Of a stretch of 64,000 bases of DNA, positions 20,190 to 47,400 are shown piece after piece. How positions within the stretch are numbered: position 1 is the stretch's first letter; each line of letters opens with the position of its first letter. The position numbers were made by a program, and so were the translations under genes. This DNA is from Macrostomum lignano (Eukaryota): contig NIVC01001138.1 of NCBI GenBank assembly GCA_002269645.1, forward strand, positions 62,001 to 126,000, written 5' to 3'. The notes beneath the pieces were generated by a model that had not been told where the DNA came from, searched no databases, and worked only from the letters and a program-made list of their open reading frames with translations.

Positions 20190-20929
20190 TCAGCTGCGAA
20201 GTGACGTCACCCTTGGACACCAAGCCTTGGAATTGAAAATTGGAACGCTCGCTGCCCTTCAAACTGAATCCAATTACGAGCGTACTTCTTTCTTGAATCT
20301 GATATTAACCTTGAACATATATTGTTTCAATTTACTGTTTCTGTAAGAAATCCACTTTTTTCGAGTTACAAGGCATAACATAACTGACATTGTATTCAAA
20401 CTGCCACAGTGTATTCTTCACAAGGGTTTGCCGTGTATTACCGATTTTTAACACATTTTTCATGGGGTTGGATTCTTATAGAATTCAATAATTTTATGCA
20501 AAATATAATTTTGATGAATGTATTTTATTGCTAAAATGATTTCCGGATCATTTAAAGATTTTTCTACCTTTTTTAAGCGTGACAACTTTAATAAGTAAAT
20601 AATTAAATAATCAGGAAGAGCTAAGACGGCATCTAAGAGAGAGCCTTAAAGAAGCGTCTTGACTAAATCAGGTATAAGCAGGTTAACGCATTCAGTGCCA
20701 GCGCACCGACAGAGCAGCACAAAAGGAAAACAACCAATCGAAGAATAAAACTTTTCTTGTGAAGATCAGCTTTTCCTAAATAATTTGAACATCAAGCTTT
20801 GTACCATCAGCGCTGTGACGTAATGGCCGACTTGAGTACGGCATGAACTAGACTTGATGCTATCAAGTTGGCGAAACAACAGCAAGACAAAATAGTAGCA
20901 AGAGAAAACTCAATAAACACAAAGCAGCA

Positions 20930-22400
20930 ATCAAGTTAGACAGGACAACAATCAAGTTAAACAGAACAATAATCAAGTTAGACAAGACAAAAATAATCAA
21001 GTTAGACAGGACAACAATCAAGTTAAACAGAACAATAATCAAGTTAGACAGGACATCAATCAAGTTAGACAGGACTATAATCAAGTTAGACAGGACAACA
21101 ATCAAGTTAGACAGGACATCAATCAAGTTAGACAAGACAAAAATAATCAAGTTAGACAGGACAACAATCAAGTTAAACAGAACAATAATCAAGTTAGACA
21201 GGACAACAATCAAGTTAGACAGGACATCAATCAAGTTAGACAAGACAAAAATAATCAAGTTAGACAGGACAACAATCAAGTTAAACAGAACAATAATCAA
21301 GTTAGACAGGACAACAATCAAGTTAGACAGGACTATAATCAAGTTAGACAGGACAACAATCAAGTTAGACAGGACATCAATCAAGTTAGACAAGACAAAA
21401 ATAATCAAGTTAGACAGGACAACAATCAAGTTAAACAGAACAATAATCAAGTTAGACAGGATAACAATCAAGTTAGACAGGACTATAATCAAGTTAGACA
21501 GGACAACAATCAAGTTAGACAGGACATCAATCAAGTTAGACAAGACAAAAATAATCAAGTTAGACAGGACAACAATCAAGTTAAACAGAACAATAATCAA
21601 GTTAGACAGGACAACAATCAAGTTAGACAGGACTATAATCAAGTTAGACAGGACAACAATCAAGTTAGACAGGACTATAATCAAGTTAGACAGGACAACA
21701 ATCAAGTTAGACAGGACAACAATCAAGTTAGACAGGACAACAATCAAGTTAGACAGGACTATAATCAAGTTAGACAGGACAACAATCAAGTTAGACAGGA
21801 CAACAATCAAGTTAGACAGGATAACAATCAAGTTAGACAGGACAACAATCAAGTTAGACAGGACAACAATCAAGTTAGCTCGTAGACAGGACAACAATCA
21901 AGTTAGCTCGTAGACAGGACAACAATCAAGTTAGCTCGTAGACAGGACAACAATCAAGTTAGCTCGTAGACAGGACAACAATCAAGTTAGCTCGTAGACA
22001 GGACAACAATCAAGTTAGCTCGTAGACAGGATAACAATCAAATTAGACAGGACAACAATCAAGTTAGACAGGACAACAATCAAGTTAGACAGGACAACAA
22101 TCAAGTTAGACAGGACAACAATCAAGTTAGCTCGAAGACAGGACAACAATCAAGTTAGCTCGTAGACAGGACAACAATCAAGTTAGCTCGTAGACAGGAC
22201 AACAATCAAGTTAGCTCGTAGACAGGACAACAATCAAGTTAGCTCGTAGACAGGACAACAATCAAGTTAGCTCGTAGACAGGATAACAATCAAATTAGAC
22301 AGGACAACAATCAAGTTAGACAGGACAACAATCAAGTTAGACAGGACAACAATCAAGTTAGACAGGACAACAATCAAGTTAGCTCGAAGACAGGACAATA
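20930..22400. repeat. 21-bp minisatellite (CAATCAAGTTAGACAGGACAA) with a 28-bp variant
   Basis: Tandem units; source of the (LIVVLSN)n ORF 20863..21897. Confidence 0.97.
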
Positions 22401-26713: not shown

Positions 26714-29700
26714 TCAGCCGCAGCTACCGGACGCGGACTCCAGCCGGATGGACGCGAAGCCCTGGTCGCCAGTCGAGACGGTTCCGGAGACGCAGCCGCC
26801 CAGGCAGAAGGAGCCGCCGCCGCCGGCTTTGTGCCCGTAGCCGACCCCGGCCCCGCCGCCGCTGAAGCCGCCGCCAGCGCCCGGAGCTCCGTATTTGCCG
26901 CCGCACATGCAGCCGCCTCCGCCGCCTCCGCCGAAGCCGCCGTCGCAGGCGCTGCCACCACCGGCGCTGCCGCCGACCCAGCCTTCGGCCAGACCGCCGC
27001 CTCGCTCGCCATCACTGGAGCTGCGCCTTGGGTTGACGGCCCTGCCGAGCCAGCCGGCGCCGCAGCCGCCGTGGTTGGTAGCGTTGCGCGTGCTGCTTGG
27101 ATCGTTTGTGCCCGGCTGGCCATTGCTGCCTCCGAATCCCATAGCAGTGTAGTGAGCTCCAATGGTGTCGGAGCCGTTGACACCGACTTCTGCTGGCCTT
27201 CCTAATCAGAGTATCAAGCATTGGAACACATAACATATACATATACAGCACGGTGAATTTACATATAGTCGTAACAGATGTTGTATCCCTGCAGCCCCCG
27301 GCCCGGCAGTAGGGTGGTCCTACAGGGTACAGTACAATCGGGTCCTTGCTAAGCCTGCGCGCGGGCGCTAGGGCGAGCACTTCCCTGACAGTCTGGGGCG
27401 TCAGGACGCACCCACGCAGCCTTCCCACGCGTCGGGACGCAGTGGTGAGGGCCGCCTTCAGCGAGGCGTCGGGACGCACTGGCTGGCGTAGAGGCGTACG
27501 GTAGGTATCCTACTGCCGTATAAACCCCAACTAGCTGAGTCGGCGTCCGGACACACGGACTCTCTGCCCCCTAGGCAACCGAAAGAACGAAGACAGGACG
27601 CGCACTTACTTAGTTGGCAGCTGTCGCTCAGGGCTCAGGAAGATGGCCTTCTTTGGTGTATTTCTTTATCAAAGTGGGTCTGTATAACTTGGGCTGTTTA
27701 ACTTGGGCTGTAGATAGCTCTGACGAAGAACCACGTGCACGGAGAGGGGACAGTCGAGACGCGCACCGCTCCAACCCGCCGCGAGCGATGTTAAATAGCA
27801 CACGCCCGCGGAGGGGGAGGGCCACGCGCTCTCAACCCCACCACCCCACCAACCCCCAGCCAACCCCCCCCCGGGGCCGGCCACCAAGCCCGCCGCCGGC
27901 TCAGCCAATCACCACGCGACTGGCTGGCCGCGACCAATCGCCACGCAGGGCGAGCAAACAAATGCCAAAACTTAAGCCTCTGGCTGCGGCAACGCAAAAA
28001 GGGGGGTGAATAACAAAAACTGAAAACAACTAGTTGAGGGGTGACTCAGCCCGCTGGGGCTAGGTGCACAGGCCCGCAAAAGTGCACAACACAACACCCC
28101 GCCTCCCAACAAAAGGAAGAAGCTCATACGAGCCAGTAACGCTGATTACAGAAACAAATGACAACGAATGACACCACAGCTGCACAACCTGCACCGCACA
28201 TGGGCAAGGGGTTCAAAGGCTGCTTGACCTACATGACTGACAACACGCGTACATTAAATCGATGGGGTTGAACACGAAATAAAACAACCAGATGAACCAA
28301 TGATGACAAAAGGAATTAACGTGTGATGCCACAAAAATTCGACCATTGACGACGCAAAAAAACTTGACTGCTAATGACGCAAAAAGATTTATGGAATTCT
28401 GACACCAATGATTTAACGATGAACGACACAAAAGAGTTTAATGATAAATGATTAGAGCTAGTCACTGTTCTCCACCGCACCGTCCCTGTGCTAATCCTTG
28501 CCGAGTCGGCTGCCCTTTCTCCGTTGACTCTCGACACCTCGCCTGGGTCCGGGGTTCCGGCGCTGGCGTCGGCGTCACCAGAATTAAGCTTCAGCCCGGT
28601 GACTGCTTGGCGTCCGCTGGAACCCGCCTGGCCTGGGACCATCACTTCAGTGGAGGACGCCGCTGCTTCTCACCCGGCCGCCGCTATTGCTGTCCACTCT
28701 GGACGACCAGGTGCTTGCCAATCGTGCGCCTCCCGCCTCCAGTCTCCCGGCTGCCCCTCTACCTAACCCTCATACCACCCATACGGTAACCCAACTGCAT
28801 ACGACTAACACGGAAAATACGATACACCCAACCCCCGCACCAGGGACAGGGAAACGAACAACCGGACACGCCCGACAGGGCCTGCACCCCCAGCCCAGCC
28901 CACACTCACACCCTACTAGCACTCGCACGCCACCACACGAGCACAACAGCGCAGCAGCGCCTGGACCTGGCCCGCACCTAGCAGCTCGAACCGAGGGATC
29001 ACCACCTTCCGCATCACTCGAGCTGCTCGCTTTAAACATTCGCGTTTCCAACCGCTCCGACGACCGCGTCCCTTGGACCACGTCACTGAAATGTCCCGGC
29101 GCAGAAACTTGAGCACTTGAAGTGTCACCGCCGTCAGATAACGCCTCGGCTCTTCTCGCCGCACCCTAAACAGGTCAGCCAGCTCCTCAAACACGTTTAC
29201 GATCTCTTCCTCCTCGCCCTTCAGCAATGCCGTTCTCAGACTCCGGCGCAGCTCCACAAATCTCGTTGTGCTCGGTAACGGTAGCTCCTCCATCTCGACT
29301 GTCGTCGCCCCGACCGGTACCAGCTTCCAAGCCTCGACATCCGGCAGGTCCTCCCCGTCTGTCTCCATCTCTCCGACCTGGTCTGTTTCGTCGTCGCTGA
29401 TAATGATGCAGTAGCCGCTGTCTGGCGCATAGCTTCGCTCGAATGACTGACGAAAACCCTGCTCCTCGGCCTCCCAGCCGGGCGGCCGACTTCCGTCGCT
29501 GACGGCCGACTCACTGTCGGTATCCCCGGGTTCGTCGTCTCCACGGAAGGCGTCCGCATCCGACTGCTCGTCCTCACTCGGCATGTCCTCATCTTCCAGC
29601 CTGATCGCTTCCAGGATGTCCTCTGGCACGGGAATGTCTGACGGGGGTTGAACCTGTCTAGCCAACTCTACCGCCCCGCTGAACGAGATTGACGAATCAC

Positions 29701-32700
29701 CGTACATGTCATACAACCACCGCCGAAATGGGCACCCGAGAATTTCATACGCGACGTTGAGGGCTTTGCATTTCTCTTCTGCGAATGCCCGGTCCGGGTG
29801 CTTGTCCGGGTGATACTTCAGGGCTAGCCGCCGATAGGCTCTCTTGACTGCAGTTGCCTCCACCCCCTGGTCGATCTCCAGTTCGTCGTACAAGGACATC
29901 TACGGAGTGCCGTTTCTTGCCGTTAAAATCGCATTTTCCGCTACTAAACCTGGTCCGTGTGCCTTCCGACTCATCCACCCGCTACAACCACCTAACCGCC
30001 GACAACCCCCAACCCGTTCAGAACCTCAGCCGATCCGGCGGTCGCCTGTGCCGAGTCGGATATCTCCTGGTGGTGAGAGTCTCCGCTGCGGGCGCTTCTA
30101 GTCCTTTCCATTCTTCTGGTGGATCGGGTCCTTCCCATTCTTCCGGCAGGCCACTTTGAGGCGACTCCGAGCTTCTCACGCTACCACCGACCTCGTTCTC
30201 CAGTCCTTGCTCGACCTCCGCTGGTGGTGGTCGACCACGTCGGCCTACCTGCTCAGCTTCCTCCTCTTCATCCTCTTGGCTCTGCACGTCCTCTGTCACC
30301 GCACCTCCTTCCTCCTGGCTCGCTTCGTTCGCCGCTGACCTCGACTTCTTATAAGGCGACAGGTTGTTGAAATGTACTCTTTTGGTCCTCCTTGGATTAG
30401 CCGGATTCTGAACTTCGTACACGGTCTCGGAAATCTTCCGCACCACTTCAACTGGTCCCTTCCAATCGACCCGGAACTTGTTCGGCACCTCCCCCGGCTT
30501 GGCTGGCACGAACACAAAAACTAGGTCCCCGGGTTGGTGCGCGGATCCACGTACTTTCCTGTCGTAATAGTCCTTCTGCAACTTCTGGTATGTGCCGGTC
30601 GCTCGTCGCACTGCTTCATGTGCTTGATGGAGGTGCTTTCTCAAGCCGGCCACGTACGTTGACTCGTCCAGCGGCTCTTGTGGTGTTTTGTAAGCTACAT
30701 CCAGTGGTAATCGCATCTCTTGGCCGTGCAGGAGGAAGTACGGTGTGTAGCCAGTGCCGCGATGCACACTTAAACGGTACGCCATCAAGGCTGAGTCGAT
30801 TAGTTCATCCCATTTGTGTGACTCTGCTCCCTCAGCGATGTAGCTTCGCAGTACTGACTTCAACGTCTGATTGAACTTCTCCACCTGCCCATTTCCACTT
30901 GGATGGTAGGCCGTGGTTCTGGTTTTCTGGATTTTCAGAAGCGTGCACAGCTCTCGCATTACTCGAGACTCGAAGTTCCGCCCTTGGTCACTGTGAATCG
31001 AACTCGGGCAACCGTAGATACTAACCCAGTGCCCAAATATGGCGCGCGCCACTGTTGATGCTCGTTGGTTGCGGATCGGGATCGCTGCCGGCCATTTAGT
31101 GAACGCATCCTGCAGCGTTAAGATGTACTGATGACCTCTGGCACTCCTTGGCAACGGCCCGACAATGTCCACCATCACTCTCTCAAAAGGTTCGCCCGTT
31201 CGAATCGGCTCTCCACTGGAGATTCGAACTCTCTAGCCTTCTTCGCCAACTTCGAGCGGCCGCAGACTTCGCAGCTCCTTACGCTCTCGGCGATCTCGCG
31301 GCTGATCCCGGGTCTCCAGAACCGTGCAAGGACCTTTCGCTTTGTCTTCTGCAGGCCGAAATGGCCGCCCGCCACGCCACTATGACAGTCGATCACAATC
31401 CTCTGCAGCAGACTCTGTGGTAGCACAATCTGGTCCGCGCCTTTCCACCTCCGCACCAATATTCCGCCGTCCACCTTGAGCTGCTCGCACTGCGCCATGA
31501 GCGCTCTGCCCCCTGGGGTCCATCTCAGCTTCTCGCTCACGCTCTCATTTCCGCTGACCAGCTCTTTCATCCATCGAATCTCGTCTTCCGCGTACTGCGC
31601 TTTTACCAGTTCATGTCGCTCGTCAGCCACGTTCAGCGCACTCACACCATTTGAGATCACTGGTGCAAAATCTGAGCAGGATGGAAATTCTAGGAAGCCT
31701 GCATGTCGCCGGGTCTGCCGTCTTGACAACGAATCCGCATTTCCGTGACAGAGCCCGCTGCGATGCACCACGTAGTAGTCGAATTCTGCCAGCTTTTCCA
31801 GCCACCTAGCACACTAACCTTCTGGATCCTTCAGATTTTGAATCCACTTCAAGTTGTTGTGATCCGTTCGCAAGCAAAATCTTCTTCCAGCCAGATAGTA
31901 CCGATACTTGACCATGAACGTCACCACCGCCAGCAGCTCTACTCTGGTCGTGCAATAGTTCCGCTCTGCCGATGACAACGATCTTGAGCCATACGCGATA
32001 ACCTTCTCACTTCCGTCCACTTGCTTCTGAGACAACACGGCGCCAATGCCAATAGATGAGCTCGCATCCGTGTCAAGAATGAACTCGCCGGCCTCGGGTC
32101 CAAAATCCGGAAACGCCATCACGTCTGTACTCGTCAGCCGCGCTTTCAAGTCCCGGAACGATCGCTCTTCGTCCGGTCCCCACTCAAACTCGACACCTTT
32201 GCGAGTCAACCTGAGCAGCGGCTCGGCAACACTCGAGAAGTTTTTGATAAATCGGCGATAATAGCTGCACAATCCCATGAACGATTGCACGTCTCTGGTG
32301 TTCTTCGGTTGGGGCCAGTTTCTGATCACTTCGACCTTCTCACTCTCCGTCTCCACTCCCGCCTCCGACACCTGATGGCCCAGGAACGTTACCTTCTTCA
32401 TCAGAAAATGACACTTCTCTGGCTTCAACTTCACTCCAGCCTTCCGCAGCCGAATGAACACCTCTTCTAACCTTTCCAGATGCTCGTCAACCGTCTTGGA
32501 CCACACGAGGATATCGTCCAGGTAGATTAAGCATGTCTTCCAGGCCACGTCGCGCATTGCTAGAGCCATCAGCCGCGTGAAAGTTGCAGGGCTATTGACG
32601 AGTCCGAACGGCATCACTTTCCACACGTACTGACCCTTCAGAGGCACCGAGAAGGCCGTCTTGAGTTGATCCTCTAGTCTTAATTTCACCTGCCAGTAGC

Positions 32701-35700
32701 CGCTGTGGAGGTCCATCGAGCTGAACACTCTGGCTCCCGCCAGTTCGTCCAACGCATCATCCATCCTCGGCAACGGAATTGCATCTCGTGTCGTTACTTT
32801 ATTCAAACCACGGTAGTCTACACACATCCGTAAGCTGCCATCCTTCTTGCGTACACAAACGATTGGCGCGTTCCAAGGAGACTGTGCTGACTCAATGCGT
32901 CCCTGCTCTTCTAGCTCATCCACGAGAGCATGCACTTCTTGCCTAAGGTGCGGGGGCAGCCTCCGTGGCGGGATGTTGACCGGCTTGGCCTCTCCAGTGT
33001 CGATCTGGTGCTCCACCAAGGGTGTCACACCCAACTGTGCTGAGTCCGTCGCGAAAAGATCACCGTACGAGTCGACTAAGTCCTTAAACCGCTGGCGCTG
33101 CCTCTCAGTCGTCATTCCGTCACCCCACTTGCCGAGCTTCTCCCAAACTTTGTCCTCTTCGCGTTCCTCGGCCTTATCTGTCCTGCTGAGACGTTCCTTT
33201 GAATTACTTTGCAACGCCGCGATCCTTGGCTGCTCTTCCAGTTCCAGCGGTCGATACCAGCCAACAGCCTCTCCTCGCCGCAACCGCACCGGTTGCTCTG
33301 ATAGGTTGCAGACACAAACCACAATCTTTCCGTTCTCATCTGGGGTCACAAGCGTTCTCGCGGCAACCACTCCAGTTCCCTTGAGGTGCTTCAACGGATC
33401 CATCATTCCTGCTACTCGGACATTTCGACCTCCCCTCGTATCCAGTCGACCGAGCAGAACCGCCTCGTGGCCTGGTTTAACCGTTGCTGTATCATTCAGG
33501 CGAATCCGGCACACCACTGGTCGCTCTCGTTGGAACCGGATCGGAAGCACTACATTCCTGAGTCGCAGCTCTGCTCTGGCGTAATCGATTTGGCAGCCAT
33601 GCCGTTGCAGAAAGTCCGAACCCAGCACGAGGTCGTAACCAATCCCTGCCACCACCAGCACGTCGATCGGCACGCTCTCATCCATTTCTAAGTCCAACGT
33701 GGTGACACCAATCACCTGAATGGGACTGCCATTTGCAGTTGTGACTTTGGCGAATGGCCCCCGGAAAAGCTCTGGTTTGTACCGCAACCACGAGAACATC
33801 GCCTCCGACATGATGGTACACGAAGCTCCCGAGTCCAACAGCGCTGACACGTGATTATCTTTGGCAATCTTTATACTCACATAGACTGATGTCGGGACGA
33901 TGTTGATGGTGGCCTGTGAAATACTCGGCTTCGGGACAGTGCTAGATGCTCGAGTCAGTGATGTCGCAGCCGGTGCAAACGTCGATGAAGCAGCAGGTGC
34001 GACGGTTGATGACGCAACAGGTGGGACGATTGATGACGCAACAGGTGGGACGATTGATGACGCAACAGGTGAGACGGTTGATGATGCAATAGGTGGGACG
34101 ACTGATGACGCAACAGGTGAGACGATTAATGACGCAACATGTGGGACGATTGATGACGCAACAGATGGGACGACTGATGACGCAACATGAGAGACGATTG
34201 ATGATGAGTTAAATGACGCCTGATCCCTTTTCCTCGACGGCTCCATTTGGGGGCGTTTCATGACCTCCGGGGCTCACTTCCCCCACTGCGGGCCCCGCTC
34301 TCCATTTCCCTCCGATCTACACTTGGCAGCCACGTGACCAAGTTTGCCACACCGGTGGACCGAATGCCGCGTCCCGCTTGAGCTCCTTGGTGCGGACCTC
34401 CGGCTTTCTTCGGACAACGGTTCGCCATGTGCCCCTTCTCATGGCAATTCCAACACTCCACATCGCTCTGTTGATTCGCTGGTGGTGGTCTCTGAGAACT
34501 CTTCCCTCCGCCGGATCCTGACGCCTGACTCTGCCGTAGCTGCCGTTCCAGCGCCTCGATCCTGGCCCGCAGGGCGCCGACGTCCTCTTGATTTGCCTCC
34601 CCGGCTGCGCCCACAGCGTTGAAAGCCGCCGTCTTGCCTTGTCCCGGCTGCCCCACGTGAGCCGCTCGAATTGCAGCGTCCAGCTGACGGGCACTCCTGA
34701 TCGCAGCAGCCAGACTCTCCGGCTGGCTAAGAAATACTTTCTCCCGGACTGGCTCGGCTACTCGCACAACTTCATGAATCGGTCCTTGGCCAGCTCCGAC
34801 CTCGCGTCCTGATCAATCGTCGGATAGGCGTTCCGGACTATCTCGAGCAGGGCGTCACCGTAGGCCTCCATCGACTCCTTCTGGTCTTGGTCCCGTCCCG
34901 CCAGCTCCAATCTGAAGTCTTGCGGAGTCCGATGCTGCGTGAACCTGTTCAGCAGATGTTCAGTAAACTCCTCATACTCCAAATCATCCGCCAGATTAAG
35001 GTTGTCCACCGCGATATACGCTGTGTTGAGATCCAGCAGACTCATCAGATGTGGCCTTCGATCCGCTTCTTCAATCCCAGTCGCCTCACAAAATTCGTTG
35101 AAACTCCTCAACCACAGGCGAAAATTCATTCCAGTCACATACTTAACTGGCTTCGCAACTCTTGGAGGCCCATGGTTCAAATTCTCGCGCAGCCTGTCCG
35201 TCAGCGCACCAATCAGGTCATCGATACCCGCCATTGGTCACAGTAAAACCACAAGCCGCCGACTGCACTGGCACAATTAAGCGACTCGACTCGAAGCTCG
35301 ATCCAGAACTCGACACGAAGAACTCACTACCCTCAACACAACACACCCAGAAAAACTACAGGCAAAGCAGGTCCCTGTTTGGGCGCCAATTTGTTGTATC
35401 CCTGCAGCCCCCGGCCCGGCAGTAGGGTGGTCCTACAGGGTACAGTACAATCAGGTCCTTGCTAAGCCTGCGCGCGGCGCTAGGGCGAGCACTTCCCTGA
35501 CAGTCTGGGGCGTCAGGACGCACCCACGCAGCCTTCCCATGCGTCGGGACGCAGTGGTGAGGGCCGCCTTCAGCGAGGCGTCGGGACGCACTGGCTGGCG
35601 TAGAGGCGTACGGTAGGTATCCTACTGCCGTATAAACCCCAACTAGCTGAGTCGGCGTCCGGACACACGGACTCTCTGCCCCCTAGGCAACCGAAAGAAC

Positions 35701-38700
35701 GAAGACAGGACGCGCACTTACTTAGTTGGCAGCTGTCGCTCAGGGCTCAGGAAGATGGCCTTCTTTGGTGTATTTCTTTATCAAAGTGGGTCTGTATAAC
35801 TTGGGCTGTTTAACTTGGGCTGTAGATAGCTCTGACGAAGAACCACGTGCACGGAGAGGGGACAGTCGAGACGCGCACCGCTCCAACCCGCCGCGAGCGA
35901 TGTTAAATAGCACACGCCCGCGGAGGGGGGAGGGCCACGCGCTCTCAACCCCACCACCCCACCAACCCCCCAGCCAACCCCCCCCCCGGGGCCGGCCACC
36001 AAGCCCGCCGCCGGCTCAGCCAATCACCACGCGACTGGCTGGCCGCGACCAATCGCCACGCAGGGCGAGCAAACAAATGCCAAAACTTAAGCCTCTGGCT
36101 GCGGCAACGCAAAAAGGGGGGTGAATAACAAAAACTGAAAACAACTAGTTGAGGGGTGACTCAGCCCGCTGGGGCTAGGTGCACAGGCACCGCAAAAGTG
36201 CACAACACAACACAGATGAGCATTTAGAAGAAACTTGAATCCGTCTTTCCTTGATAGGAAGGTTCAGCAAACTGGGGTGGCGGGCATGCACTGGTTAAAG
36301 CGAGATGACTGGGCTTGGCTGGCGGCCTGTCGCTCAGATTTGGTCGCGGTCGATAAAACGCTTCAAGCGGTCGTGGTGGCCCATCAAATGGCGCCTGCCG
36401 TTCACAGCCTGCAGCCTGTAGTTCACAGGGCCGACTGTTTAAGGACGATGAACGGGCCGGACCACCGGTTCCACAGCGACTTGCACTGGCCGCGCTTCAT
36501 CGCATGGTGCGTCAGCATCACTCGATCACCGGTCTAGAAGTCGGCAGTCTCGGCCCCTAGACTGTAAAACTCGTGCTGCGCCCTCTGGGCCGTGTGCAGG
36601 TGCGCCCGCACTACCTGGAAGCCTGATTCTCGTCTGCAGGTCTGCGCCGTCCTGCGGCTGTTCGCGCTGCCCACCGAGTGCCAAGTCAATTGGCAGTCTG
36701 GGCTCCATGCCGCGTAGAACCTTGAACGGCGACTCGCCCGTGGAGCCGTGCTCAAAGCTGTTGTGGGCCCCACACGACGTAGGGCAGCAGGGCGTCCCAG
36801 CCGGCCTGGTTCTTCGAGCAGAATGCAGAGAGCATGTTGCCCAGCGTCTTATTGAACTTCTCGACGTTCCCGTTACAGCTGCGGTGAAACGGTGAGGTCC
36901 TCGATTTTTCTGTTCCGAGCAGTGCGCAGGTTTGCTTGAAAACTTTGGCCTCGAACTGGCGACCTTGGTCCGAGTGCACGACCTCCGGAACCCCTTGCCG
37001 CAGCACCACACAGGTCACCAGAGCCTCGGCGACCGTTTTGGCGTCAATCTGCATGTCTGAGGGCCGCCGCCTCCACCCACTTTGAAAGCGTACATGAAAT
37101 GTATCAACAAAGCAGAGGATGTAGCGCTTGCCTCACTCGGTGGCTGGCAGCGGGCCCTACCAGCTGGGGGATCACCGATGGAGCAATGCGCCGACCGGTG
37201 ACAGCGTCAGACAGGGCAGCAGCTTCTGGACCGACGCACTCACCGTCACTGGGAATTGAAAGCTGGGCTGGAGCATCGCGTATCAAACCGCGAGTAGAAC
37301 CTGGTCCTGGTCCTGCTCGTCAGGCAGATTAGCGATCTGAAACTGCACCGCCGCTGCTCGGCTGAGGGTGTCTGGCACGATGTTCTCCTTGCCGAGCCGG
37401 TACAGGATCTCCACAGGGGGAACTTCTGAATGAGCTGCAGCCAACGTACCGGCTGACGGATTGGCTCCTTCGCGTTGAGCAGCCCAGTGATCGTCTTGTG
37501 GTCGGTGAACACCTGGATCTTGCAGCTGTTGCTCAGGTACATGCGGAACTGCTTGAGACTCTAAACAATCGCGGGCAGCTCCCGGTCCGTGGTGCTGTAG
37601 TTGCGCTCTGCCTTGCTCAGCGTCCGGGAAGCGTAGGCCACTGGCAGCTCCTGGCCGTCGCGCTCCTGGCTGAGCACCGCACCCAAGGCCACAGCACTGC
37701 TGTCACAGCTGATGACGATAGGCCGGCTGAAGTCGGGCAGCTGGAGCACCGGGGCCTGGGTCAGCGCGTCCTTCAACTTGTTCAGCGCCGCAGCATGCTC
37801 TGACGTCCACATGAAGCCGCCGCCCGCGCCTTTCTGAGCCAGGTGATGCAACGGTTTGGCGATGTCAGGGGAGTTGGGCACGAACCTGCGGTAGAAGCTG
37901 AGCATGCCGATGATGCGCCGGACGCCCTCCTCGGACTGCGGCTCCGACATCCGCCTGATCGCCTCGATCTTCTTCGATCGAGTTGCCGCTCTCAGAGACT
38001 TGATGGCCCAGGTACGCGACGCTCCGGTATGCGAAGAAGCCTTGCCCGGGTTCAGCTTCAGCTTGGCATACCGCAGTCGATGCAGCACCCTGGACAGTGA
38101 CTGAACGTGGCTCTCAAAGTCCCTGTTAAAAATGATCAGGTCATCAATGTACGCGATGACCTCCTCCCAGCTCAGGCCGGTCATGATGAGCTCCATCATT
38201 TGCTGGTAGGTCGCAGGAGCGTTGCACATGCCGAATCCTGTTTTGCGGAATTGCATCAGGCGCTCGGTTTAGAACACTGTCAACGGCCGATCCTCCTCTC
38301 TGACCTCCACCTAAAGGAAGACTTGCGCATGTCGATGGTAGAGAACCATGAGCAGCCAAGGAGTCGAGCGCCTGGTGCAATTTCGGTACTACGACGGCAC
38401 CCTGAACTCTGGCGATGATCACTGTGGGAACCAAGCAACAGGACAGCGGGCCATCTGGCTTGGACTCGCAATTACTGAACGGAACCGCGTCACCATCGAA
38501 TCCGACTGTCTTGGCACCCTGGTCGATGCTGAACTGCGATCTGGCCGCCTTGCTCACGAAATCTGAGCGAATCCCTCTGACCATCAGCCCCATTTGTCTG
38601 CGCAGATGATGACCGAGTCGCACCGTAATGCTCACGCTTCCCAACAGCTCGATAACGGAGTCGTCCACGGACACATGCCTGACATCTGCCGGCTTCAGCT

Positions 38701-41373
38701 CGTAGCGACCGTCCAGCTCTCTCAAGGCAACGTCGCTGATCAGCGAGGTCTGCGCTCGGGTGTTCAGCAGCCAACGGCGCAGCTTGCTGTTTGCCTCTCT
38801 AGCCAGGAATAAAAATCGCTCGGGAAGCACGGGATTGCTCCTTGGGGTTGGTGTAGGTCCCGCACCCGTTGCACCAACCCTTAGGAGTTTCCCAGAACCT
38901 TCGATGGACAGACTGAGGCTTTGTGTCCTCGCCCCGAGCACTTGTGGCAGATGATCTGGTCCGGCTGTTTATAACGCTCCTGACATTGCGCTGCACGGTG
39001 TCCGAGATGGCCGCAGTTGAAGCAGCCGCCTTCTCGCTGCTGACGACACGCCGAGTGTCAATACCGGACTGCACGCCGACCCTTCATGATGATGAGCTCG
39101 TCCATGCGTTTCTCCAGTCAGTCCAGGCGATCCTCGCCCGGTCCCGCTGCTGATGTAGCGCCGATGGCTCCGAATGCCGTCACCGACTGTCGCCGAGCGA
39201 GCTCCCCCAGCAGAGCCGCCCACTGCAGCAGAGTCTCCAAACTGCAGGTCTCTGCGTCCTCTGCCTTGAGCAGCTGCAGAAGTTTGAAGCGCATATCTAG
39301 ATCTCGCTGAGAAACTGAATCACTCGACCTGGCATTCTGGTGCAGCAGCTTTAGGTTGAAACAGAGCTCATGGAGCGTCTCCGAGTCTTCACGCTTTTTT
39401 GAGTAGAAGTCGTTCATAGCCTCAAAAGCTGTGTGATTCACCTCCGTAAAACTTTGTGAGGTCCTCTTTGATACTATTGAAGCTCTTCTGCCTTGTCTCG
39501 GTGAGGTCCCAGACGACAAGTTGGGCTTCTCCCGTGAGCAGCAGCTTCACCTTTGATGCTAGGGTCGCGTCATCCCATTTCCCATCGTTGGCGAATTCCT
39601 CGAAGATGCATAGCAGATGCCGTCTGTTCCACTGAACTTTGGCAGTAGCAGGGTGTTCTAGGCCATTAGTGCACTTGCACTGGGTTCTCGCTGACACCAG
39701 TGTAAGAGCCGAGAAATTAGATCAATTCATGAAGTATATTTGGAATGCATGATTACTAAGGGGAGCGATTATAGAGTCAGCGATAGAATGGTTAAAATGA
39801 CTCGATCACCCAACTGGGGTGGCGGGCATGCACAGAGAAAAACGAGATACAAGTAATAAGAAAGCACCCACCCTGACGACACAAATCAAACGCAACCTCA
39901 CACAAGCATTTCTGCCTCAAAGCTCTATTGTTTCAGATTCTTTAGATATGAAAATATGACCCTACACTCCCAGTCTTAATATACACCAATCCGATGCCGG
40001 CCGACGTTCCCGACGCCAATCGCTGTGGCTGACAATTATGTGCTTTTTAAATTACAACGACTGATAACGACGTCAAGCTAAACGGATTTTTGAGACTTTT
40101 GCAGTGTTGGTACCGCCAAATACAGGTGCGAATGCGTCTGCTGTGCCGTTAGCTGCACGCGTGGCATCTCACCATTTTCCCAGCCAGTGGCGCCACCGCC
40201 GCCACCAGCAGCCAGCAGCAGCAGCCGGTCGCCCGTCCGGTACACGAAGCTGCTGCCGCCTCCGCCGCCTCCTTCGCTGCTCAGGGAGGTCGAACCGCCC
40301 ATCTGGCCCACAACAATGCTCAGCTGGACTCCGGCCGTCAGATTGACTCTGGCGCTCACCTTTACTCCTGGGCCTCCGATGGTGTTCTTCATAGTGTTGT
40401 TGCCCCCTCTGGCTCCGGCAGCCTCGATCAGGTAGCAGCCGCTAGCGGGAGCCGTGAAGGTTTCGATCGATCCGTTTCTGCCCGAGCTGCTGTCTGCAGG
40501 GGTTCATAATGATAAAATTATAATATTTTATTGCAACTGCGCCAATGGGCAGCTATTGTGCGGCGCATCTGAAGGCTGCGTACGGCTGTTCAGTCCAAGG
40601 ACTGGGGGGTCGCCACACACACCCTCAATTACCCCAGCTAATGCTGGCACCCATTTTACAGCTGGGTGAACTGAAGCAATGCAGAGTTAAGTGTCTTGCT
40701 CAAGGACACAAATGGTTCTGAGTGAGTCGAGAACCCCCGACCTTTCAGTTGTGAGTTCGATGCTCTAACCACTAGGCTGCAACCCGTTTTAGGGGTTTAT
40801 GCAGTGTCATATATAACTGTATTAAGAAGCTTTGATTGCAACTATTGTCACAGACATTTTCAAATTTCTATATCTCGTGACTCACTTCTCAGGAGACCCC
40901 CAGTTGACGTCAAACTCATCAAGTGCTGCTCAAATTCTTCCACTTTCCACAAAGTCACAGCGCTGTCGTCGGGCGAGCCGAGCTGTCTCGTCACGTGACT
41001 CCCGTTTAGGCCGGCAGGCTGCCCTGATGACTCATTGCTGAGGCTGACTGCCCGACAGACTCTGGCGGTCTTGTTCAGCTCGGCGACAGCGCAGCCTCGG
41101 AGCTGGCACAGCAGCAGGCACTGACTTTCCCGAGCGACGTCGGTCTCGACGAACAAGCTGCTCACAGAGTCACTCAGCTCAACGGAGCCGTCGGTGACGA
41201 ATCGACTGAAGCGTTTGCCACTTCCAGCGTTGGTCACTGAAATTCAATATATAATTTACAAGCATATGAAGGCTTTTGTTTTGCACCAGAGCACCCGACC
41301 TTACTTGTACTGAAGCTCTATACTCACCGTTAAATAAAATGAACACAATCGCTAAAATGAATTCCGCCTGCAT
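26714..41373 (-). CDS. Secreted PAN/Apple-like + ALK/LTK-type glycine-rich protein, copy B, 401 aa, 4 exons
   Basis: Exons 41328-41373 (signal-peptide-like MQAEFILAIVFILFN), 40886-41236 (CLLLCQLRGCAVAELNKTARVCRAV), 40173-40493 (GCYLIEAAGARGG..SIVVGQMGG..GGGGGSSFV..LLLAAGGGGGA), 26714-27201 (GGCGAGW..GGFGGGGGGG..GGGFSGGG..GGGGSF). All phase-1 GT..AG introns; 1206 nt uninterrupted. Intron 3 is 27202-40172. Confidence 0.8.
27279..28096 (-). repeat. 3' LTR of the Gypsy element (818 bp)
   Basis: Direct repeat of 35392-36212; preceded on the minus strand by the PPT. Confidence 0.97.
28916..29899 (-). CDS. Retrotransposon-borne DnaJ/Hsp40 J-domain protein, 327 aa, intronless
   Basis: ATG at 29899. 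Residues 1-67 LYDELEI..AVKRAYRRLALKYHPDK..AEEKCKALNVAYEIL..RRWLYDMYG form a four-helix J-domain with HPD at aa 30-32. Acidic linker and helical/basic C-terminus follow. Lies between the integrase stop and the 3' LTR. Confidence 0.9.
   Translation of the reverse strand: MSLYDELEIDQGVEATAVKRAYRRLALKYHPDKHPDRAFAEEKCKALNVAYEILGCPFRRWLYDMYGDSSISFSGAVELARQVQPPSDIPVPEDILEAIRLEDEDMPSEDEQSDADAFRGDDEPGDTDSESAVSDGSRPPGWEAEEQGFRQSFERSYAPDSGYCIIISDDETDQVGEMETDGEDLPDVEAWKLVPVGATTVEMEELPLPSTTRFVELRRSLRTALLKGEEEEIVNVFEELADLFRVRREEPRRYLTAVTLQVLKFLRRDISVTWSKGRGRRSGWKRECLKRAARVMRKVVIPRFELLGAGQVQALLRCCARVVACEC
30018..34261 (-). pseudogene. Gypsy pol (protease, RT, RNase H, integrase with GPY/F module), interrupted
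   Basis: LLDSGAS protease; YLDD RT; DAS/RNase H; H-H-C-C zinc finger and D..D..E integrase. In-frame TAG at 31814-31816 (DPEG*CARW, same frame continues) and a frameshift near 31200-31240. Confidence 0.92.
34274..35234 (-). pseudogene. Gypsy gag with two CCHC zinc knuckles, frameshifted
   Basis: Capsid-like ORF 34758-35234, frameshift near 34765, knuckle CWNCHEKGHMANRC; a second knuckle (C)HRCGKLGHVAAKC is restored by one missing base near 34358. Confidence 0.85.
35371..35388 (-). promoter_or_regulatory. Primer-binding site, tRNA-Lys(UUU)-type
   Basis: TGGCGCCCAAACAGGGAC immediately inside the 5' LTR; one mismatch from TGGCGCCCGAACAGGGAC. Confidence 0.88.
35392..36212 (-). repeat. 5' LTR of the Gypsy element (821 bp)
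   Basis: Direct repeat of 27279-28096, adjacent to the PBS. Confidence 0.97.
36290..39832 (-). mobile_element. Older, internally deleted and frameshifted Ty3/Gypsy element
   Basis: Fragments of gag (39118-39697), protease (WLLNTRAQTSLIS), RT/RNase H (FGMCNAPATYQ, YIDD, CDSSAVALGAVL; 37561-38256), integrase (HSDQGRQFE, NGNVEKFNKTL; 36526-37054) and WSGPF. tRNA-Leu-type PBS TGGTGTCAG at 39691-39699 next to an LTR end at 39701. Outer boundaries uncertain. Confidence 0.88.
40505..40785 (-). mobile_element. tRNA-derived CORE-type SINE in intron 2 of gene B
   Basis: Minus strand: A-box TAGTGGTTAGAGC, B-box-like GGTTCTCGACTC, then TGTGTCCTTGAGCAAGACACTTAAC...CAGCTGTAAAATGGG, which resembles the MIR/CORE domain. 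Confidence 0.75.
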
Positions 41374-42400
41374 AGTGGAATAAGTTTAGTCTCAATTTTG
41401 TGCATTCAAATTAGACTTCAGTTGCGAATGCAAGTCTTTAGGTAATTATGAGATCTGCATGCGTAGGTTTTGCATTTTATGCCGCCTTTGAACAGCAGCT
41501 GAGCAGCCAATCAGCAATGCAGGAAGCAGGAGTGATGGGCCGCTGCGCAAGCTTCATTAGGTTCAGCTTCAAGACACCATCAATTAAACATGCTAGCTCT
41601 CGCGTGCAAATAATGACAGAGTTATTCACCAGCCGAAAAGTTTCAGCCATCTGGTAAGAAGAAACTTTTCTACCCACATTAAGAATTCCTACAACAAAGC
41701 AATAGAGCTACCAGCTGGGTGAAATTGTTTGCTTTCATTTTGCTCCTACAGCAATGGCTTTGCTAAGAGTCGCTTCTGAAGCTAATTCAAAGTTTCCTGC
41801 AAGACCTCATAATGGGGAAATTTTTAGTAGTTAGTTGGGTTGATTATGGCCAAAACAGAAGCCCGCGTAGCACACGATTTCTTCTTCTTACATTAGATTG
41901 GTTAGAAGAAGAAAAGAATGCTTTTTCTTACAATTGGCAATTATTTCAGCCTGCTCTCTCTTTTGAGCTGCGGTCATTGATGTTTGTTTTTACCATAGAA
42001 GGCGGCACCGTTTTTGAGCATTGCCCCACGCGTCTATGGTAAAGAAACATTTCTGTGAAATAGTTCGTCTTTTTTATTTGATTTATTCTTGCAAGATTGA
42101 CCTTTCTATGATTTAACTGCATGACCTATGATTGAAATAGAATAAAAATGATTTTTTGCTATAGAATTGCCCGTTAGCGTTCTACTACTGTATTACAGAA
42201 TCGCTCCATTATTTCAGCACAGTGAGTGTGCGTGGATTTGGCCACAGACGAAAACGCATGATGTGAAGGCGGAGTCGGGACTCGCCGGGATAGTGGAGTT
42301 AGAGGCAGTGGTAGGTTGTGTCACAGACGAAACTGATGAACAAGCGTGGGGCCTAAAAGAAGATGGAGGGAGGGCTAGCTAGGAAGACAGACAAGCAGAC

Positions 42401-43459: not shown

Positions 43460-44055
43460 CGGTAAGCCGACGGATGTCCTGAATACGGGACAAGCAGTCA
43501 CTTCTGCTGCAGCCGAAAACTTAAAACTAAGTTCTATGGTCAAAACTGCAGCTGTGCTGCACTGCCGTTGCCGACGGCTGTGTCCCAAAAACGGGACACA
43601 CTCATGGATGGACACACTACTTTAATTTAATTTAAAATAAGTGAAAGTGTAGCGTATTCACTAATATTATAAAAGTATTGCAGCTAGCGTATTATAACTA
43701 CTGTATTCTAGAAGCTTCCGCGTAAACACGCACTTTCCATATTTGGCATTTTGAATTCCCGCGCACCCCTTTCTAGAAACTGCTTCTCGAACTTTCCGGA
43801 TTCCGGAATGTTCCATCAACACGAATATAAATATACAGCACCCTAGCACGCAATTACTCAAGCCCGCTTACCCTCTTCTTTTCCGCACGGAAAACAATCA
43901 AAGCAAAAACCAAAACAAACGAACCACCGCGTTTCACGCCTCAATTATTTTCGCAATTCTACAAAAGTGCTAACAGAACAGAAACAGGATTAGAATAGAT
44001 AATTTTGGATAGACATCATAGCAACGGAAACCTCCTTGTTAGGGTACTCCATAAA

Positions 44056-45975: not shown

Positions 45976-46134
45976 GGGAATATTTTCTATTTAGGGGTAA
46001 TGACTAAAATTCATGAGAGCTAGCCTAGAGGTAAACAGACTAAACTGCAGGGACGATGCAGGGACGATGGTTCGAATTTTTAGAGAGTAGAGTTTTTTTA
46101 ATTAAAGCTTTTTAACGCCAAGACAAAAAAAATT

Positions 46135-47400
46135 ATGGAAGCGTCATGTAAACAATCATACAAGCGTCATGTAAACAATCATAGAAGCGTCATGTAAAAA
46201 TCATAGAAGCGTCATGTAAACAATCATAGAAGCGTCATGTTAAAATCATAAAAGCGTCATGTAAACAATCATACAAGCGTCATGTAAACAATCATAGAAG
46301 CGTCATGTAAAAAAATCATAGAAGCGTCATGTTAAAATCATAAAAGCGTCATAAAAAAATCATAGAAGCGTCATGCAAACAATCATAGAAGCGTCATGTT
46401 AAAATCATACAAGCGTCATGTAAACAATCATACAAGCGTCATGTAAACAATCATAGAAGCGTCATGTAAAAAATCATAGAAGCGTCATGTTAAAATCATA
46501 AAAGCGTCATAAAAAATCATAGAAGCGTCATGTAAACAATCATACAAGCGTCATGTAAACAATCATAGAAGCGTCATGTAAACAATCATACAAGCGTCAT
46601 GTAAACAATCATAGAAGCGTCATGTAAAAATCATAGAAGCGTCATGTAAACAATCATAAAAGCGTCATGTAAACAATCATAGAAGCGTCATGTAAAAAAT
46701 CATAGAAGCGTCATGTTAAAATCATAAAAGCGTCATAAAAAATCATAGAAGCGTCATGTAAACAATCATACAAGCGTCATGTAAACAATCATAGAAGCGT
46801 CATGTAAACAATCATAGAAGCGTCATGTAAACAATCATAGAAGCGTCATGTAAAAATCATAGAAGCGTCATGTAAACAATCATAGAAGCGTCATGTTAAA
46901 ATCATAGAAGCGTCATGTAAACAATCATACAAGCGTCATGTAAACAATCATAGAAGCGTCATGTAAAAAATCATAGAAGCGTCATGTTAAAATCATAAAA
47001 CCGTCTTAAAAATCATAGAAGCGTCATGTAAACAATCATAGAAGCGTCATGTAAACAATCATAGAAGCGTCATGTAAAAATCATAGAAGCGTCATGTAAA
47101 AATCATAGAAGCGTCATGTAAACAATCATAAAAGCGTCATGTAAAAATCATAGAAGCGTCATGAAAAAATCATAGAAGCGTCATGTAAAAATCATAGTAG
47201 CGTCATGTAAAAATCATAGAAGCGTCATGTAAAAAATCATAGAAGCGTCATGTAAACAATCATACAAGCGTCATGTAAACAATCATAGAAGCGTCATGTA
47301 AACAATCTTAAAAGCGTCATGTAAACAATCATAAAAGCGTCATGTAAACAAGCATAGAAGCGTCATGTTAACATAGAAGCGTCATGAAAAAATCATAGAA
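46135..47400. repeat. 23-bp minisatellite (AGAAGCGTCATGTAAACAATCAT)
   Basis: Tandem units. Confidence 0.97.

What the first reader, a model, noticed from the sequence alone, without database searches (positions are those of the whole stretch)
28916..29899. A Ty3/Gypsy retrotransposon that encodes its own Hsp40 J-domain co-chaperone
Seen: an uninterrupted, intronless 327-aa sense ORF sits between the integrase stop (30018) and the PPT/3' LTR (28096), the slot used by env or other third ORFs. It lies inside an element bounded by near-identical LTRs and a CAGA TSD, so it moved with the element. Its first 67 aa are a complete J-domain with HPD at aa 30-32. Established: HPD J-domains stimulate Hsp70 ATPase and recruit Hsp70 to clients; polyomavirus T antigens carry their own J-domain; hepadnavirus reverse transcriptase needs host Hsp40/Hsc70 to become priming-competent. 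Inference: this lineage captured a J-domain to recruit host Hsp70 for Gag/Pol folding, particle assembly or disassembly, RT activation, or counter-silencing. I do not recall a described LTR retrotransposon with a J-protein ORF, but I could not search.
Basis: partly seen in the sequence, partly recalled or inferred. Interest (0 to 1): 0.93.

Follow-up and report, generated by a model that had tools for sequence, protein, structure and literature searches.

The report
Retrotransposon lineage carrying a J-domain gene
A Ty3/gypsy-type LTR retrotransposon carries, as a third gene after integrase, an intact Hsp70 co-chaperone (J-domain) protein that is conserved in a whole clade of related elements, so a selfish element appears to bring its own handle on the host chaperone machine.

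Summary
ORF 28916-29899 (-) is open for 327 codons. Residues 3-64 match the Pfam DnaJ model (E 9.5e-17), with HPD at 30-32. It lies inside an 8,934-bp Ty3/gypsy element (27279-36212) with 99.15%-identical LTRs, a CAGA duplication, a PBS and a PPT.

It is not a one-off capture. Full-length homologues (25-45% identity) occur in seven other sequences. Four of them show the same integrase-then-J order. One metagenome contig carries gag, an uninterrupted pol, the J ORF, a PPT and an LTR start. One homologue is annotated in the flatworm Macrostomum lignano.

In an integrase tree, the three J-bearing elements with enough integrase to place form one clade (191/200 bootstraps). HPD is kept in every copy and dN/dS is below 1.

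The protein has three parts: a canonical J-domain, an acidic disordered linker, and a basic five-helix domain with no match in PDB, BFVD or Pfam. A pyrimidine-AG lies 0-6 nt before the start codon in all lineages, which suggests a spliced or trans-spliced subgenomic mRNA.

Recruitment of host Hsp70 to a target chosen by the C-terminal domain is inferred, and the target is unknown. This copy's gag and pol are broken. No prior description turned up in the papers searched.

The parts
27275..27278 (.). Target-site duplication CAGA (3' side of the element)
   Evidence: CAGA directly flanks both LTR ends.
27279..28096 (-). 3' LTR (818 nt; TG...CA in element sense)
   Evidence: 99.15% identical to 35392-36212.
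28097..28107 (-). Polypurine tract abutting the 3' LTR
   Evidence: an 11-nt purine-rich tract (one C among ten purines) lies immediately 5' of the LTR start. L006 has the same arrangement.
28108..28915 (-). About 0.8 kb untranslated region between the J ORF stop and the PPT
   Evidence: neither tblastx nor blastn finds conservation with the corresponding regions of related elements, so there is no conserved fourth ORF.
28916..29899 (-). Third ORF: 327-aa J-protein, intact
29699..29899 (-). J-domain (aa 1-67), HPD at aa 30-32
   Evidence: Pfam DnaJ E 9.5e-17. Foldseek probability 1.0 to solved J-domains. Best PDB sequence matches are DNAJB2, DNAJC5 and DNAJB1 at E 5e-15 to 2e-13. HPD is kept in all six aligned homologues that have an N-terminus, and is also present in L008 and L009.
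29285..29698 (-). Acidic disordered linker (aa 68-205)
   Evidence: pI 4.05, with 41 D/E in 138 residues. pLDDT is below 50 over most of aa 110-201. Length varies among homologues.
28919..29284 (-). Basic C-terminal five-helix domain (aa 206-327), specific to this family
   Evidence: AF2 pLDDT 88.9, pTM 0.82. pI 10.8. 17 invariant columns in 7 sequences. No significant match in PDB, BFVD or Pfam.
29900..30017 (-). Integrase-J spacer (118 nt), with a pyrimidine-AG (29900-29902) abutting the ATG: candidate splice or trans-splice acceptor
   Evidence: a YAG lies 0-6 nt before the J start codon in six lineages, although the spacers are otherwise unalignable.
30018..34261 (-). pol (protease, RT, RNase H, integrase zinc finger, integrase core, integrase C-terminal domain). 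Broken: one in-frame stop and one frameshift
   Evidence: Pfam domains. Compared with the uninterrupted 1,254-aa pol of L006: 54% identity, two frames plus one stop.
34258..35234 (-). gag (CCHC zinc knuckle). Broken: one frameshift. The junction with pol needs a further frame change, which may be programmed
35371..35388 (-). Primer-binding site (18 nt, starts TGG, 3 nt after the 5' LTR)
   Evidence: Seventeen of the 18 nt recur in L006 at the same position. The primer tRNA was not identified.
35322..35327 (-). GTGAGT between the PBS and gag: candidate splice donor
   Evidence: L006 has GTGAGT in the same PBS-to-gag interval. The hexamer is not rare in the element (7 per 8.9 kb), so this is only suggestive.
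35716..35721 (-). GTAAGT inside the LTR leader: second candidate splice donor
   Evidence: it aligns with GTGAGT in the L006 leader.
35392..36212 (-). 5' LTR (821 nt), with a TATA-like box and two inverted CCAAT boxes
36213..36216 (.). Target-site duplication CAGA (5' side of the element)

Best explanation
The ORF is the accessory third gene of an old lineage of Ty3/Mdg4 (gypsy) LTR retrotransposons. It encodes a class-C (type III) J-protein.

Shown:
- The gene lies inside the element and is inherited with it.
- It is conserved under purifying selection across elements whose pol genes differ by about 45%.
- The protein has three parts: a canonical HPD J-domain, an acidic disordered linker, and a basic five-helix domain found only in this family.

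Inferred from established J-protein biology:
- The J-domain docks on host cytosolic Hsp70 and triggers its ATPase.
- The C-terminal domain selects the client.
- The client is most likely the element's own nucleoprotein (Gag/Pol/RNA particles), for assembly, remodelling or uncoating.

Inferred from a conserved pyrimidine-AG abutting the start codon and GTRAGT motifs in the leader:
- The gene is translated from a spliced subgenomic mRNA, as env is in retroviruses, or from an SL trans-spliced one if the host is a flatworm.

This copy is young, since its LTRs are 99% identical. Its gag and pol are broken, so only the J ORF is intact here.
For: - Position and ORF: inside LTR/TSD boundaries, with a J-domain at E 9.5e-17.
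- Homologues found by an exhaustive profile search of 1.84 billion representatives: P0001, P0002, P0241, P0243 (Macrostomum lignano, UniRef A0A1I8G8I7), P0246/P0391 and P0254.
- Integrase directly upstream on the same strand in L002, L006, L008 and the M. lignano model.
- L006 carries gag, an intact 1,254-aa pol, the J ORF, a PPT and an LTR start.
- The three J-bearing elements with enough integrase to place are monophyletic in an integrase NJ tree (191/200). The nearest J-less relatives (L003, L005) fall in another clade and give no tblastn hit to J.
- HPD is kept in every copy, and 17 C-terminal columns are invariant.
- Nei-Gojobori dN/dS is 0.09-0.26 in the J-domain and 0.22-0.51 in the C-terminal domain.
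- GC3 of J (0.70) resembles gag/pol (0.60-0.66), not the AT-richer flanks.
- J fold confirmed. The C-terminal fold is predicted confidently and has no known relative.
- A YAG lies next to the ATG in six lineages.
- ORF3s of LTR elements are typically expressed from spliced messages (PMC5408684). SL trans-splicing and polycistronic precursors are common in M. lignano (PMC5730564).
Against: - No expression data. No splice junction has been observed. GTRAGT is not rare in the element.
- dS is saturated, so dN/dS values are rough.
- Neither Hsp70 stimulation nor the client was tested.
- The family is small in public data: seven other sequences, two of which (L008, L009) carry stops in the J ORF.
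- Only one homologue has a named host, and the window's own host is unidentified.
- This copy's gag and pol are broken, so the intact J ORF here could simply reflect the copy's youth.
Confidence: 0.7

Rival explanations
1. The J-protein acts on the host rather than on the element's own particles. By engaging or titrating Hsp70 it would change the host stress response or the chaperone-dependent loading of small-RNA silencing complexes. This would be counter-defence or self-activation. The phage RB43 protein Rki, which acts through DnaK on the heat-shock factor, is an analogue (own knowledge).
For: The C-terminal domain has no detectable relation to gag, pol or any known protein, so nothing ties it to the element's own proteins. 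Some flatworm LTR retrotransposons exploit the heat-shock pathway through heat-shock elements in their LTRs (PMC12801592). The window holds a cluster of three canonical heat-shock elements at 43706-43813, although outside this element.
Against: This element's LTRs contain no canonical heat-shock element, so a self-activating loop through the heat-shock factor has no visible cis target. No evidence links the protein to silencing factors.
Confidence: 0.15
2. The ORF is a passenger: a host DNAJ mRNA fragment picked up by template switching and carried without function. It is intact in this copy only because the insertion is young.
For: The copy is young (LTRs 99.15% identical) and its gag and pol are already broken, so intactness here proves little. 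The J-domain is closest to ordinary eukaryotic cytosolic J-domains (DNAJB2, DNAJC5, DNAJB1), consistent with a host origin at some point. Two related copies have stops in the ORF.
Against: Full-length homologues with HPD stay open in six sequences that are only 25-45% identical to one another. The layout is the same in all of them, and the three that could be placed form one integrase clade. dN/dS is below 1 in every pair and region. The C-terminal domain is conserved although it has no cellular homologue.
Confidence: 0.04
3. The J region is not a separate gene. It is a C-terminal extension of Pol, made by read-through or frameshifting at the integrase stop, as the Macrostomum gene model that joins integrase and J in one frame might suggest.
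For: In the M. lignano protein P0243 the integrase C-terminus runs straight into the J-domain methionine.
Against: In the window, L002 and L006 the ORFs are separated by 118, 245 and 82 nt. The spacers are not conserved. The frame offset between integrase and J differs among the loci: +1 in the window and L006, -1 in L002. P0243 is a 3,375-aa automatic model that strings unrelated pieces together, so its junction may be a predicted intron ending at the same AG.
Confidence: 0.04

Closest known systems
Additional (third) ORFs of LTR retrotransposons: env of errantiviruses, the GDSL lipase and DEDDy exonuclease ORF3s of bdelloid rotifer elements, plant aORFs, and the AlkB demethylase domain of orchid Ty3/gypsy elements
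   Same: The position is the same: downstream of integrase and upstream of the PPT. The ORF is separate, lineage-specific, and presumably captured from a cell or virus and then kept. Such ORFs are usually expressed from spliced messages (PMC5408684; PMC7264820 and PMC9289625, listed).
   Different: The cargo is a J-domain co-chaperone, which none of the surveys searched mention (0 occurrences of DnaJ, J domain or chaperone). It has no transmembrane segment or signal peptide (maximum 19-aa hydropathy 1.22), so it is not env-like.
Virus-encoded J-domain proteins: polyomavirus large and small T antigens, and phage RB43 Rki (own knowledge)
   Same: A parasite genome carries its own HPD J-domain fused to a parasite-specific domain and uses it to direct host Hsp70/DnaK.
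   Different: Those are DNA viruses or phages. No homology to them was found beyond the generic J fold: the BFVD search with the C-terminal domain found nothing, and the best J-domain matches are cellular DNAJB and DNAJC5. Here the carrier is a reverse-transcribing LTR element.
Class C (type III) cellular J-proteins such as auxilin or DNAJC5 (own knowledge)
   Same: A J-domain plus an unrelated client-binding domain, with no G/F region, zinc-finger or DnaJ C-terminal domains (only PF00226 is found).
   Different: The J-domain is N-terminal and is followed by an acidic linker and a basic helical bundle that matches no known family. The gene is not cellular: it lies inside a mobile element.
Ty3/Mdg4 (gypsy) elements of flatworms and cnidarians: the Mag, CsRN1 and Gmr1/Osvaldo clades described for Macrostomum lignano (PMC12801592)
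   Same: gag with a CCHC knuckle, pol in the order PR-RT-RH-IN, a 4-bp duplication and TG...CA LTRs. The nearest named integrase relatives are from M. lignano, flukes and sea anemones.
   Different: That study does not mention a J-domain ORF. I could not assign a clade because no reference set was available. gag has CCHC, not the CHCC that I recall for CsRN1 (own knowledge).

Membership tests
J-domain proteins (Hsp40/DNAJ) | About 70-residue helical J-domain fold | tested here: met
   Pfam PF00226 E 9.5e-17 over the whole model. AF2 pLDDT about 85. Foldseek probability 1.00, rmsd 1.1-2.5 A to many solved J-domains. PDB sequence hits down to E 5e-15.
J-domain proteins (Hsp40/DNAJ) | HPD tripeptide in the loop between helices II and III | tested here: met
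   H30-P31-D32. Invariant in all six aligned homologues that have an N-terminus and present even in the two decayed copies.
J-domain proteins (Hsp40/DNAJ) | Stimulates the ATPase of an Hsp70 partner | not testable with these tools
   Biochemical property. Inferred only from the canonical sequence.
Class A/B J-proteins (DnaJ/Sis1 type) | G/F-rich region, with or without a zinc-finger domain, plus DnaJ C-terminal substrate-binding domains | tested here: not met
   No PF00684 or PF01556 hit in any of the 7 members at E<=1. The linker is acidic, not G/F-rich. The protein is therefore class C.
Ty3/Mdg4 (gypsy, Metaviridae) LTR retrotransposon | Direct LTRs ending TG...CA, a short target-site duplication, a PBS and a PPT | tested here: met
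Ty3/Mdg4 (gypsy, Metaviridae) LTR retrotransposon | gag with a zinc knuckle, and pol in the order PR-RT-RNase H-IN | tested here: met
   Pfam: zf-CCHC, gag-asp_proteas, RVT_1, RT_RNaseH, Integrase_H2C2, rve and Integrase_p58_C, in that order along the minus strand.
Ty3/Mdg4 (gypsy, Metaviridae) LTR retrotransposon | Uninterrupted gag and pol reading frames (an autonomous copy) | tested here: not met
   Against the intact L006 pol, this pol has one in-frame stop and one frameshift, and gag has one frameshift. Family membership stands, but this copy is defective.
Env-carrying gypsy elements (errantivirus-like) | The third ORF is a membrane glycoprotein with a signal peptide and a transmembrane anchor | tested here: not met
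   The N-terminus is acidic. Maximum Kyte-Doolittle hydropathy over 19 residues is 0.94-1.56 in five family members. The only domain found is DnaJ.

The most novel reading that the evidence does not exclude
A clade of reverse-transcribing LTR elements has carried its own Hsp70 co-chaperone gene since an old single acquisition. It would be the first retroelement-encoded J-protein. It joins a canonical J-domain to a new basic helical domain that targets Hsp70 either to the element's particles or genome, or to a host pathway. It would be expressed through a splice or trans-splice acceptor placed at its start codon.
Probability: 0.6. Interest if true: 0.82.

Novelty: new variant of a known kind. 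Interest (0 to 1): 0.72.

Why it matters
Retroviruses, hepadnaviruses and LTR retrotransposons are known or suspected to depend on host Hsp70/Hsp40 (own knowledge). In all of them the co-chaperone is supplied by the host. An element that encodes its own J-protein would show that chaperone recruitment can limit retroelement fitness enough to be worth a gene.

The C-terminal domain would act as a natural pointer to the step where Hsp70 is needed. The finding also adds a new class of cargo to the list of genes captured by LTR elements. The parallel with polyomavirus T antigens and a phage J-protein would then be a case of convergence.

The family can be tested directly with expression and distribution data from flatworm genomes.

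Tried and rejected
1. Long-range RNA pairing between the 5' leader and the integrase-J spacer. I noticed complementary 9+7-nt segments in the window and a 10-nt segment in L006. RNAduplex on whole segments was uninformative. Local-complement scores were at chance for the window (20/100 and 55/100 shuffles reached the observed value) and only marginal for L006 (1/100 and 10/100). Dropped.

2. Third word-indexed protein search, using the C-terminal domain profile. It returned only P0254 and missed known members, so it says nothing about distribution.

3. Exact-sequence look-ups of the window's J protein and gag N-terminal ORF. Nothing is on record, so the host could not be identified this way.

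4. Literature search for the Logan run accessions. No hits, so the organism behind SRR31628392, SRR31628394, SRR31628403 and SRR31628435 stays unknown. The M. lignano heat-shock study deposited its data under a different accession.

5. Canonical heat-shock elements in this element's LTRs. None found.

6. A conserved fourth ORF or conserved sequence between the J stop and the PPT. None found.

7. Fold and sequence searches for the C-terminal domain in PDB, BFVD and Pfam. Only de novo designed helical bundles came back, at non-significant scores.

8. A second J copy in the window or in the J-less relatives L003-L005. None found.

9. Clade assignment (Mag, CsRN1, Gmr1/Osvaldo and so on). Not possible without reference sequences.

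10. Primer tRNA for the PBS. Not identified. The window has no tRNA gene.


Full report
**1. Observation**

- The minus-strand ORF 28916-29899 is open for 327 codons from an ATG.
- Residues 3-64 match the whole Pfam DnaJ model (PF00226, E 9.5e-17, 61.3 bits, cut-off 27.8). HPD is at residues 30-32.
- An AlphaFold2 model gives the N-terminal 70 residues a pLDDT of about 85. Foldseek places them on dozens of solved J-domains with probability 1.00 and rmsd 1.1-2.5 A.
- By sequence, the closest solved J-domains are eukaryotic cytosolic ones: DNAJB2, DNAJC5 and DNAJB1, at E 5e-15 to 2e-13.

**2. The element**

- The ORF lies in an 8,934-bp Ty3/gypsy element on the minus strand, 27279-36212.
- The LTRs are 818 and 821 nt and 99.15% identical (2 mismatches, 5 one-base gaps). 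They begin TG and end CA in element sense and are flanked on both sides by CAGA.
- An 18-nt PBS starting TGG lies 3 nt after the 5' LTR. An 11-nt purine-rich tract (one C among ten purines) abuts the 3' LTR.
- Pfam finds, in order: a CCHC knuckle, aspartic protease, RT, RNase H, the integrase zinc finger, the integrase core and the Ty3-type integrase C-terminal domain.
- I compared the element with the uninterrupted 1,254-aa pol of a related element, L006. Against it, the window's pol carries one in-frame stop and one frameshift, and gag carries one frameshift.
- This copy is therefore young but defective. Only the J ORF is intact.
- The element is nested in the 3' part of an older, degraded gypsy element (36438-38941, minus strand).

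**3. The ORF is not a one-off**

The word-indexed protein search found two full-length homologues at 40-45% identity (P0001 and P0002, both Logan contigs). All other hits were J-domain-only matches to cellular DnaJ proteins.

An exhaustive profile search of 1.84 billion representatives added four more:

- P0241, 264 aa, from a JGI metagenome.
- P0243, a 3,375-aa automatic gene model of the flatworm Macrostomum lignano (UniRef A0A1I8G8I7). It holds protease and integrase pieces followed by a full J-protein homologue at residues 500-806.
- P0246/P0391, from Logan.
- P0254, from JGI.

Context of these sequences:

- L002 has the integrase C-terminus (58% identical to the window's) directly upstream on the same strand.
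- L008 has the same arrangement.
- L006 is nearly a whole element: a gag-like ORF with a zinc knuckle, an intact pol, the J ORF 82 nt later, and then, 335 nt after its stop, a PPT followed by TGTTG, the same LTR start as in the window.
- Two copies (L008, L009) carry stops in the J ORF, as expected for some members of any transposon family.

The nearest integrase relatives whose flanks I could read (L003/L004 and L005, about 50% identity) have no J ORF.

In a neighbour-joining tree of the integrase core, the three J-bearing elements with enough sequence form a clade in 191 of 200 bootstraps. The J-less ones group elsewhere, with sea-anemone sequences. The sisters of the J clade are P0121 (host unknown) and an M. 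lignano integrase. This fits one old acquisition followed by vertical descent within an element lineage.

**4. Constraint**

- Across seven sequences that are 25-45% identical, HPD is kept wherever the N-terminus is present.
- A motif just after the J-domain (CP[FY]RR..Y) is present in five of the six N-terminus-bearing sequences. P0391 has SPYRR at that place.
- Seventeen columns of the C-terminal domain are invariant.
- Five ORFs for which DNA is available have no internal stop over 264-337 codons.
- Nei-Gojobori estimates give dN/dS of 0.09-0.26 for the J-domain, 0.15-0.47 for the linker and 0.22-0.51 for the C-terminal domain.
- Synonymous sites are saturated (pS 0.63-0.91), so these values are rough upper bounds.
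- GC3 of the J ORF (0.70) matches gag and pol (0.60-0.66), not the AT-richer surroundings.
- The J protein diverges faster (34% identity to L006) than gag (56%) or pol (54%).

**5. Architecture**

- The protein has three parts: the J-domain (aa 1-67, near-neutral), a linker (aa 68-205) and a C-terminal domain (aa 206-327).
- The linker is acidic (pI 4.05, 41 D/E), is predicted to be disordered, and varies in length among homologues.
- The C-terminal domain is basic (pI 10.8).
- Modelled alone with seven sequences, the C-terminal domain folds as a five-helix bundle with pLDDT 88.9 and pTM 0.82. An invariant G-R-R..W sits in the loop between helices 3 and 4.
- It has no significant match in PDB by sequence or fold, in BFVD, or in Pfam.
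- The protein has no G/F region, zinc-finger or DnaJ C-terminal domains, so it is a class C J-protein.
- It has no hydrophobic segment, so it is not env-like.

**6. How it is probably expressed (inference)**

- The integrase-J spacers are 82-325 nt long and cannot be aligned with one another.
- The frame offset between integrase and J differs among loci, which argues against read-through or frameshifting.
- A pyrimidine-AG directly abuts the ATG in the window, L001, L002 and L007. It lies 1 nt before the ATG in L006 and 6 nt before it in L009.
- The leaders of the window and L006 both carry GTRAGT at two corresponding places: one inside the LTR, and one between the PBS and gag. The hexamer occurs 7 times in the element, so this is weak evidence.
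- Third ORFs of LTR elements are generally expressed from spliced messages (PMC5408684).
- If the host is a flatworm, spliced-leader trans-splicing of a polycistronic precursor is an equally good reading (PMC5730564).
- No junction has been observed.

**7. What it probably does (inference)**

- By established J-protein biology, a canonical HPD J-domain docks on Hsp70 and triggers ATP hydrolysis, and the rest of the protein selects the client.
- I rank the models as follows:
  - Recruitment of host Hsp70 to the element's own nucleoprotein, for assembly, remodelling or uncoating.
  - Action on a host pathway, such as the stress response or silencing.
  - A functionless passenger, which the data contradict.
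  - A Pol extension, which the data also contradict.
- The basic C-terminal domain could bind nucleic acid or an acidic partner. Nothing here discriminates between the two.

**8. Host**

- The window is dense in minisatellites and transposon fragments.
- That is compatible with the repeat profile reported for M. lignano, where LTR elements make up 21% of the genome and tandem repeats 15% (PMC5730564).
- However, no protein in the database is closer than 40-58% to the window's element, and exact look-ups found nothing.
- The host remains unidentified. The only named host of a family member is M. lignano.

**9. Novelty**

- Five full-text searches and term look-ups in five papers found no J-domain or chaperone ORF described in an LTR retrotransposon.
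- The five papers were surveys of LTR-element accessory ORFs, the DARTS method paper, and the M. lignano LTR study.
- Virus-encoded J-domains are known in polyomaviruses and in a phage (own knowledge), and captured third ORFs are known in LTR elements.
- I therefore rate this a new variant of a known kind, not a new category.

**10. Limits**

- No expression, interaction or activity data.
- Synonymous sites are saturated.
- The family sampled so far is small.
- The samples are of unknown origin.
- The neighbour-joining tree rests on about 220 columns.

The decisive functional experiment lies outside what this report may propose. The descriptive substitutes are a census, unsaturated dN/dS, junction reads, proteomics and predicted complexes.

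Noticed in passing
window 33984-34204 (minus-strand pol ORF, upstream of the protease): A 24-nt tandem repeat, 9 copies at 86% match, lies inside the reading frame. It encodes a Ser/Val/Ala/Pro-rich octapeptide array between the gag end and the protease.
   Followed up: no
window 36438-38941 (minus strand): An older, degraded Ty3/gypsy fragment (RT, RNase H and integrase; 27-43% identical to L006 pol). The J-bearing element is inserted just downstream of its integrase, so it is nested. The older element has no J homologue.
   Followed up: partly
window 43706-43813 (minus strand): Three canonical heat-shock elements (GAAnnTTCnnGAA) lie within 108 bp. They are the only three in the window; 0.93 are expected by chance, and 10 of 100 shuffles reach three. 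This resembles the HSE-bearing LTR promoters reported in Macrostomum lignano (PMC12801592).
   Followed up: no
window 40189-41398 and 53381-54605: A pair of direct repeats of about 1.2 kb, 86-95% identical and 13.2 kb apart. They may be the LTRs of an older element that now encloses tandem arrays, the HSE cluster and the piggyBac fragments.
   Followed up: no
window 48858-50142 (minus strand): Two ORF fragments of a piggyBac-type transposase (DDE_Tnp_1_7 and its zinc finger).
   Followed up: no
window 63136-63636 (minus strand): An ORF with an ABC-2 type (ABCG-like) transporter segment, Pfam PF19055 at E 1.3e-10. It may be the only host-gene exon seen in the window.
   Followed up: no
window, throughout (e.g. 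2-545, 5112-6781, 10339-12436, 20928-22382, 46127-47501, 58948-60229): An unusually high density of minisatellite arrays with 15-59-nt units. One stretch (10001-12000) has a GC skew of -0.91.
   Followed up: no
window 29952-29973; L001 51-69; L002 about 1096-1112: A motif of about 20 nt (GTCGGA..CACACGGRC) is conserved 50-120 nt upstream of the J start codon in the three closest elements, although the rest of the spacer cannot be aligned. It is absent from L006 and L007. Its complement occurs in the window's LTR leader, but that complementarity is at chance level.
   Followed up: partly
L008 852-1907 and L009 about 144-1097: Decayed copies of the J ORF. L008 is 99.2-99.7% identical in DNA to L007 but has about 50 extra bases and three in-frame stops. 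L009 has one stop. L009 begins with an A-rich tract instead of integrase sequence.
   Followed up: partly
L003/L004 1-4619: The contigs that carry the nearest J-less relative also encode polysaccharide-lyase-like genes (Lyase_catalyt, Lyase_N) next to the element, in ENA metagenome assemblies of unknown host.
   Followed up: no
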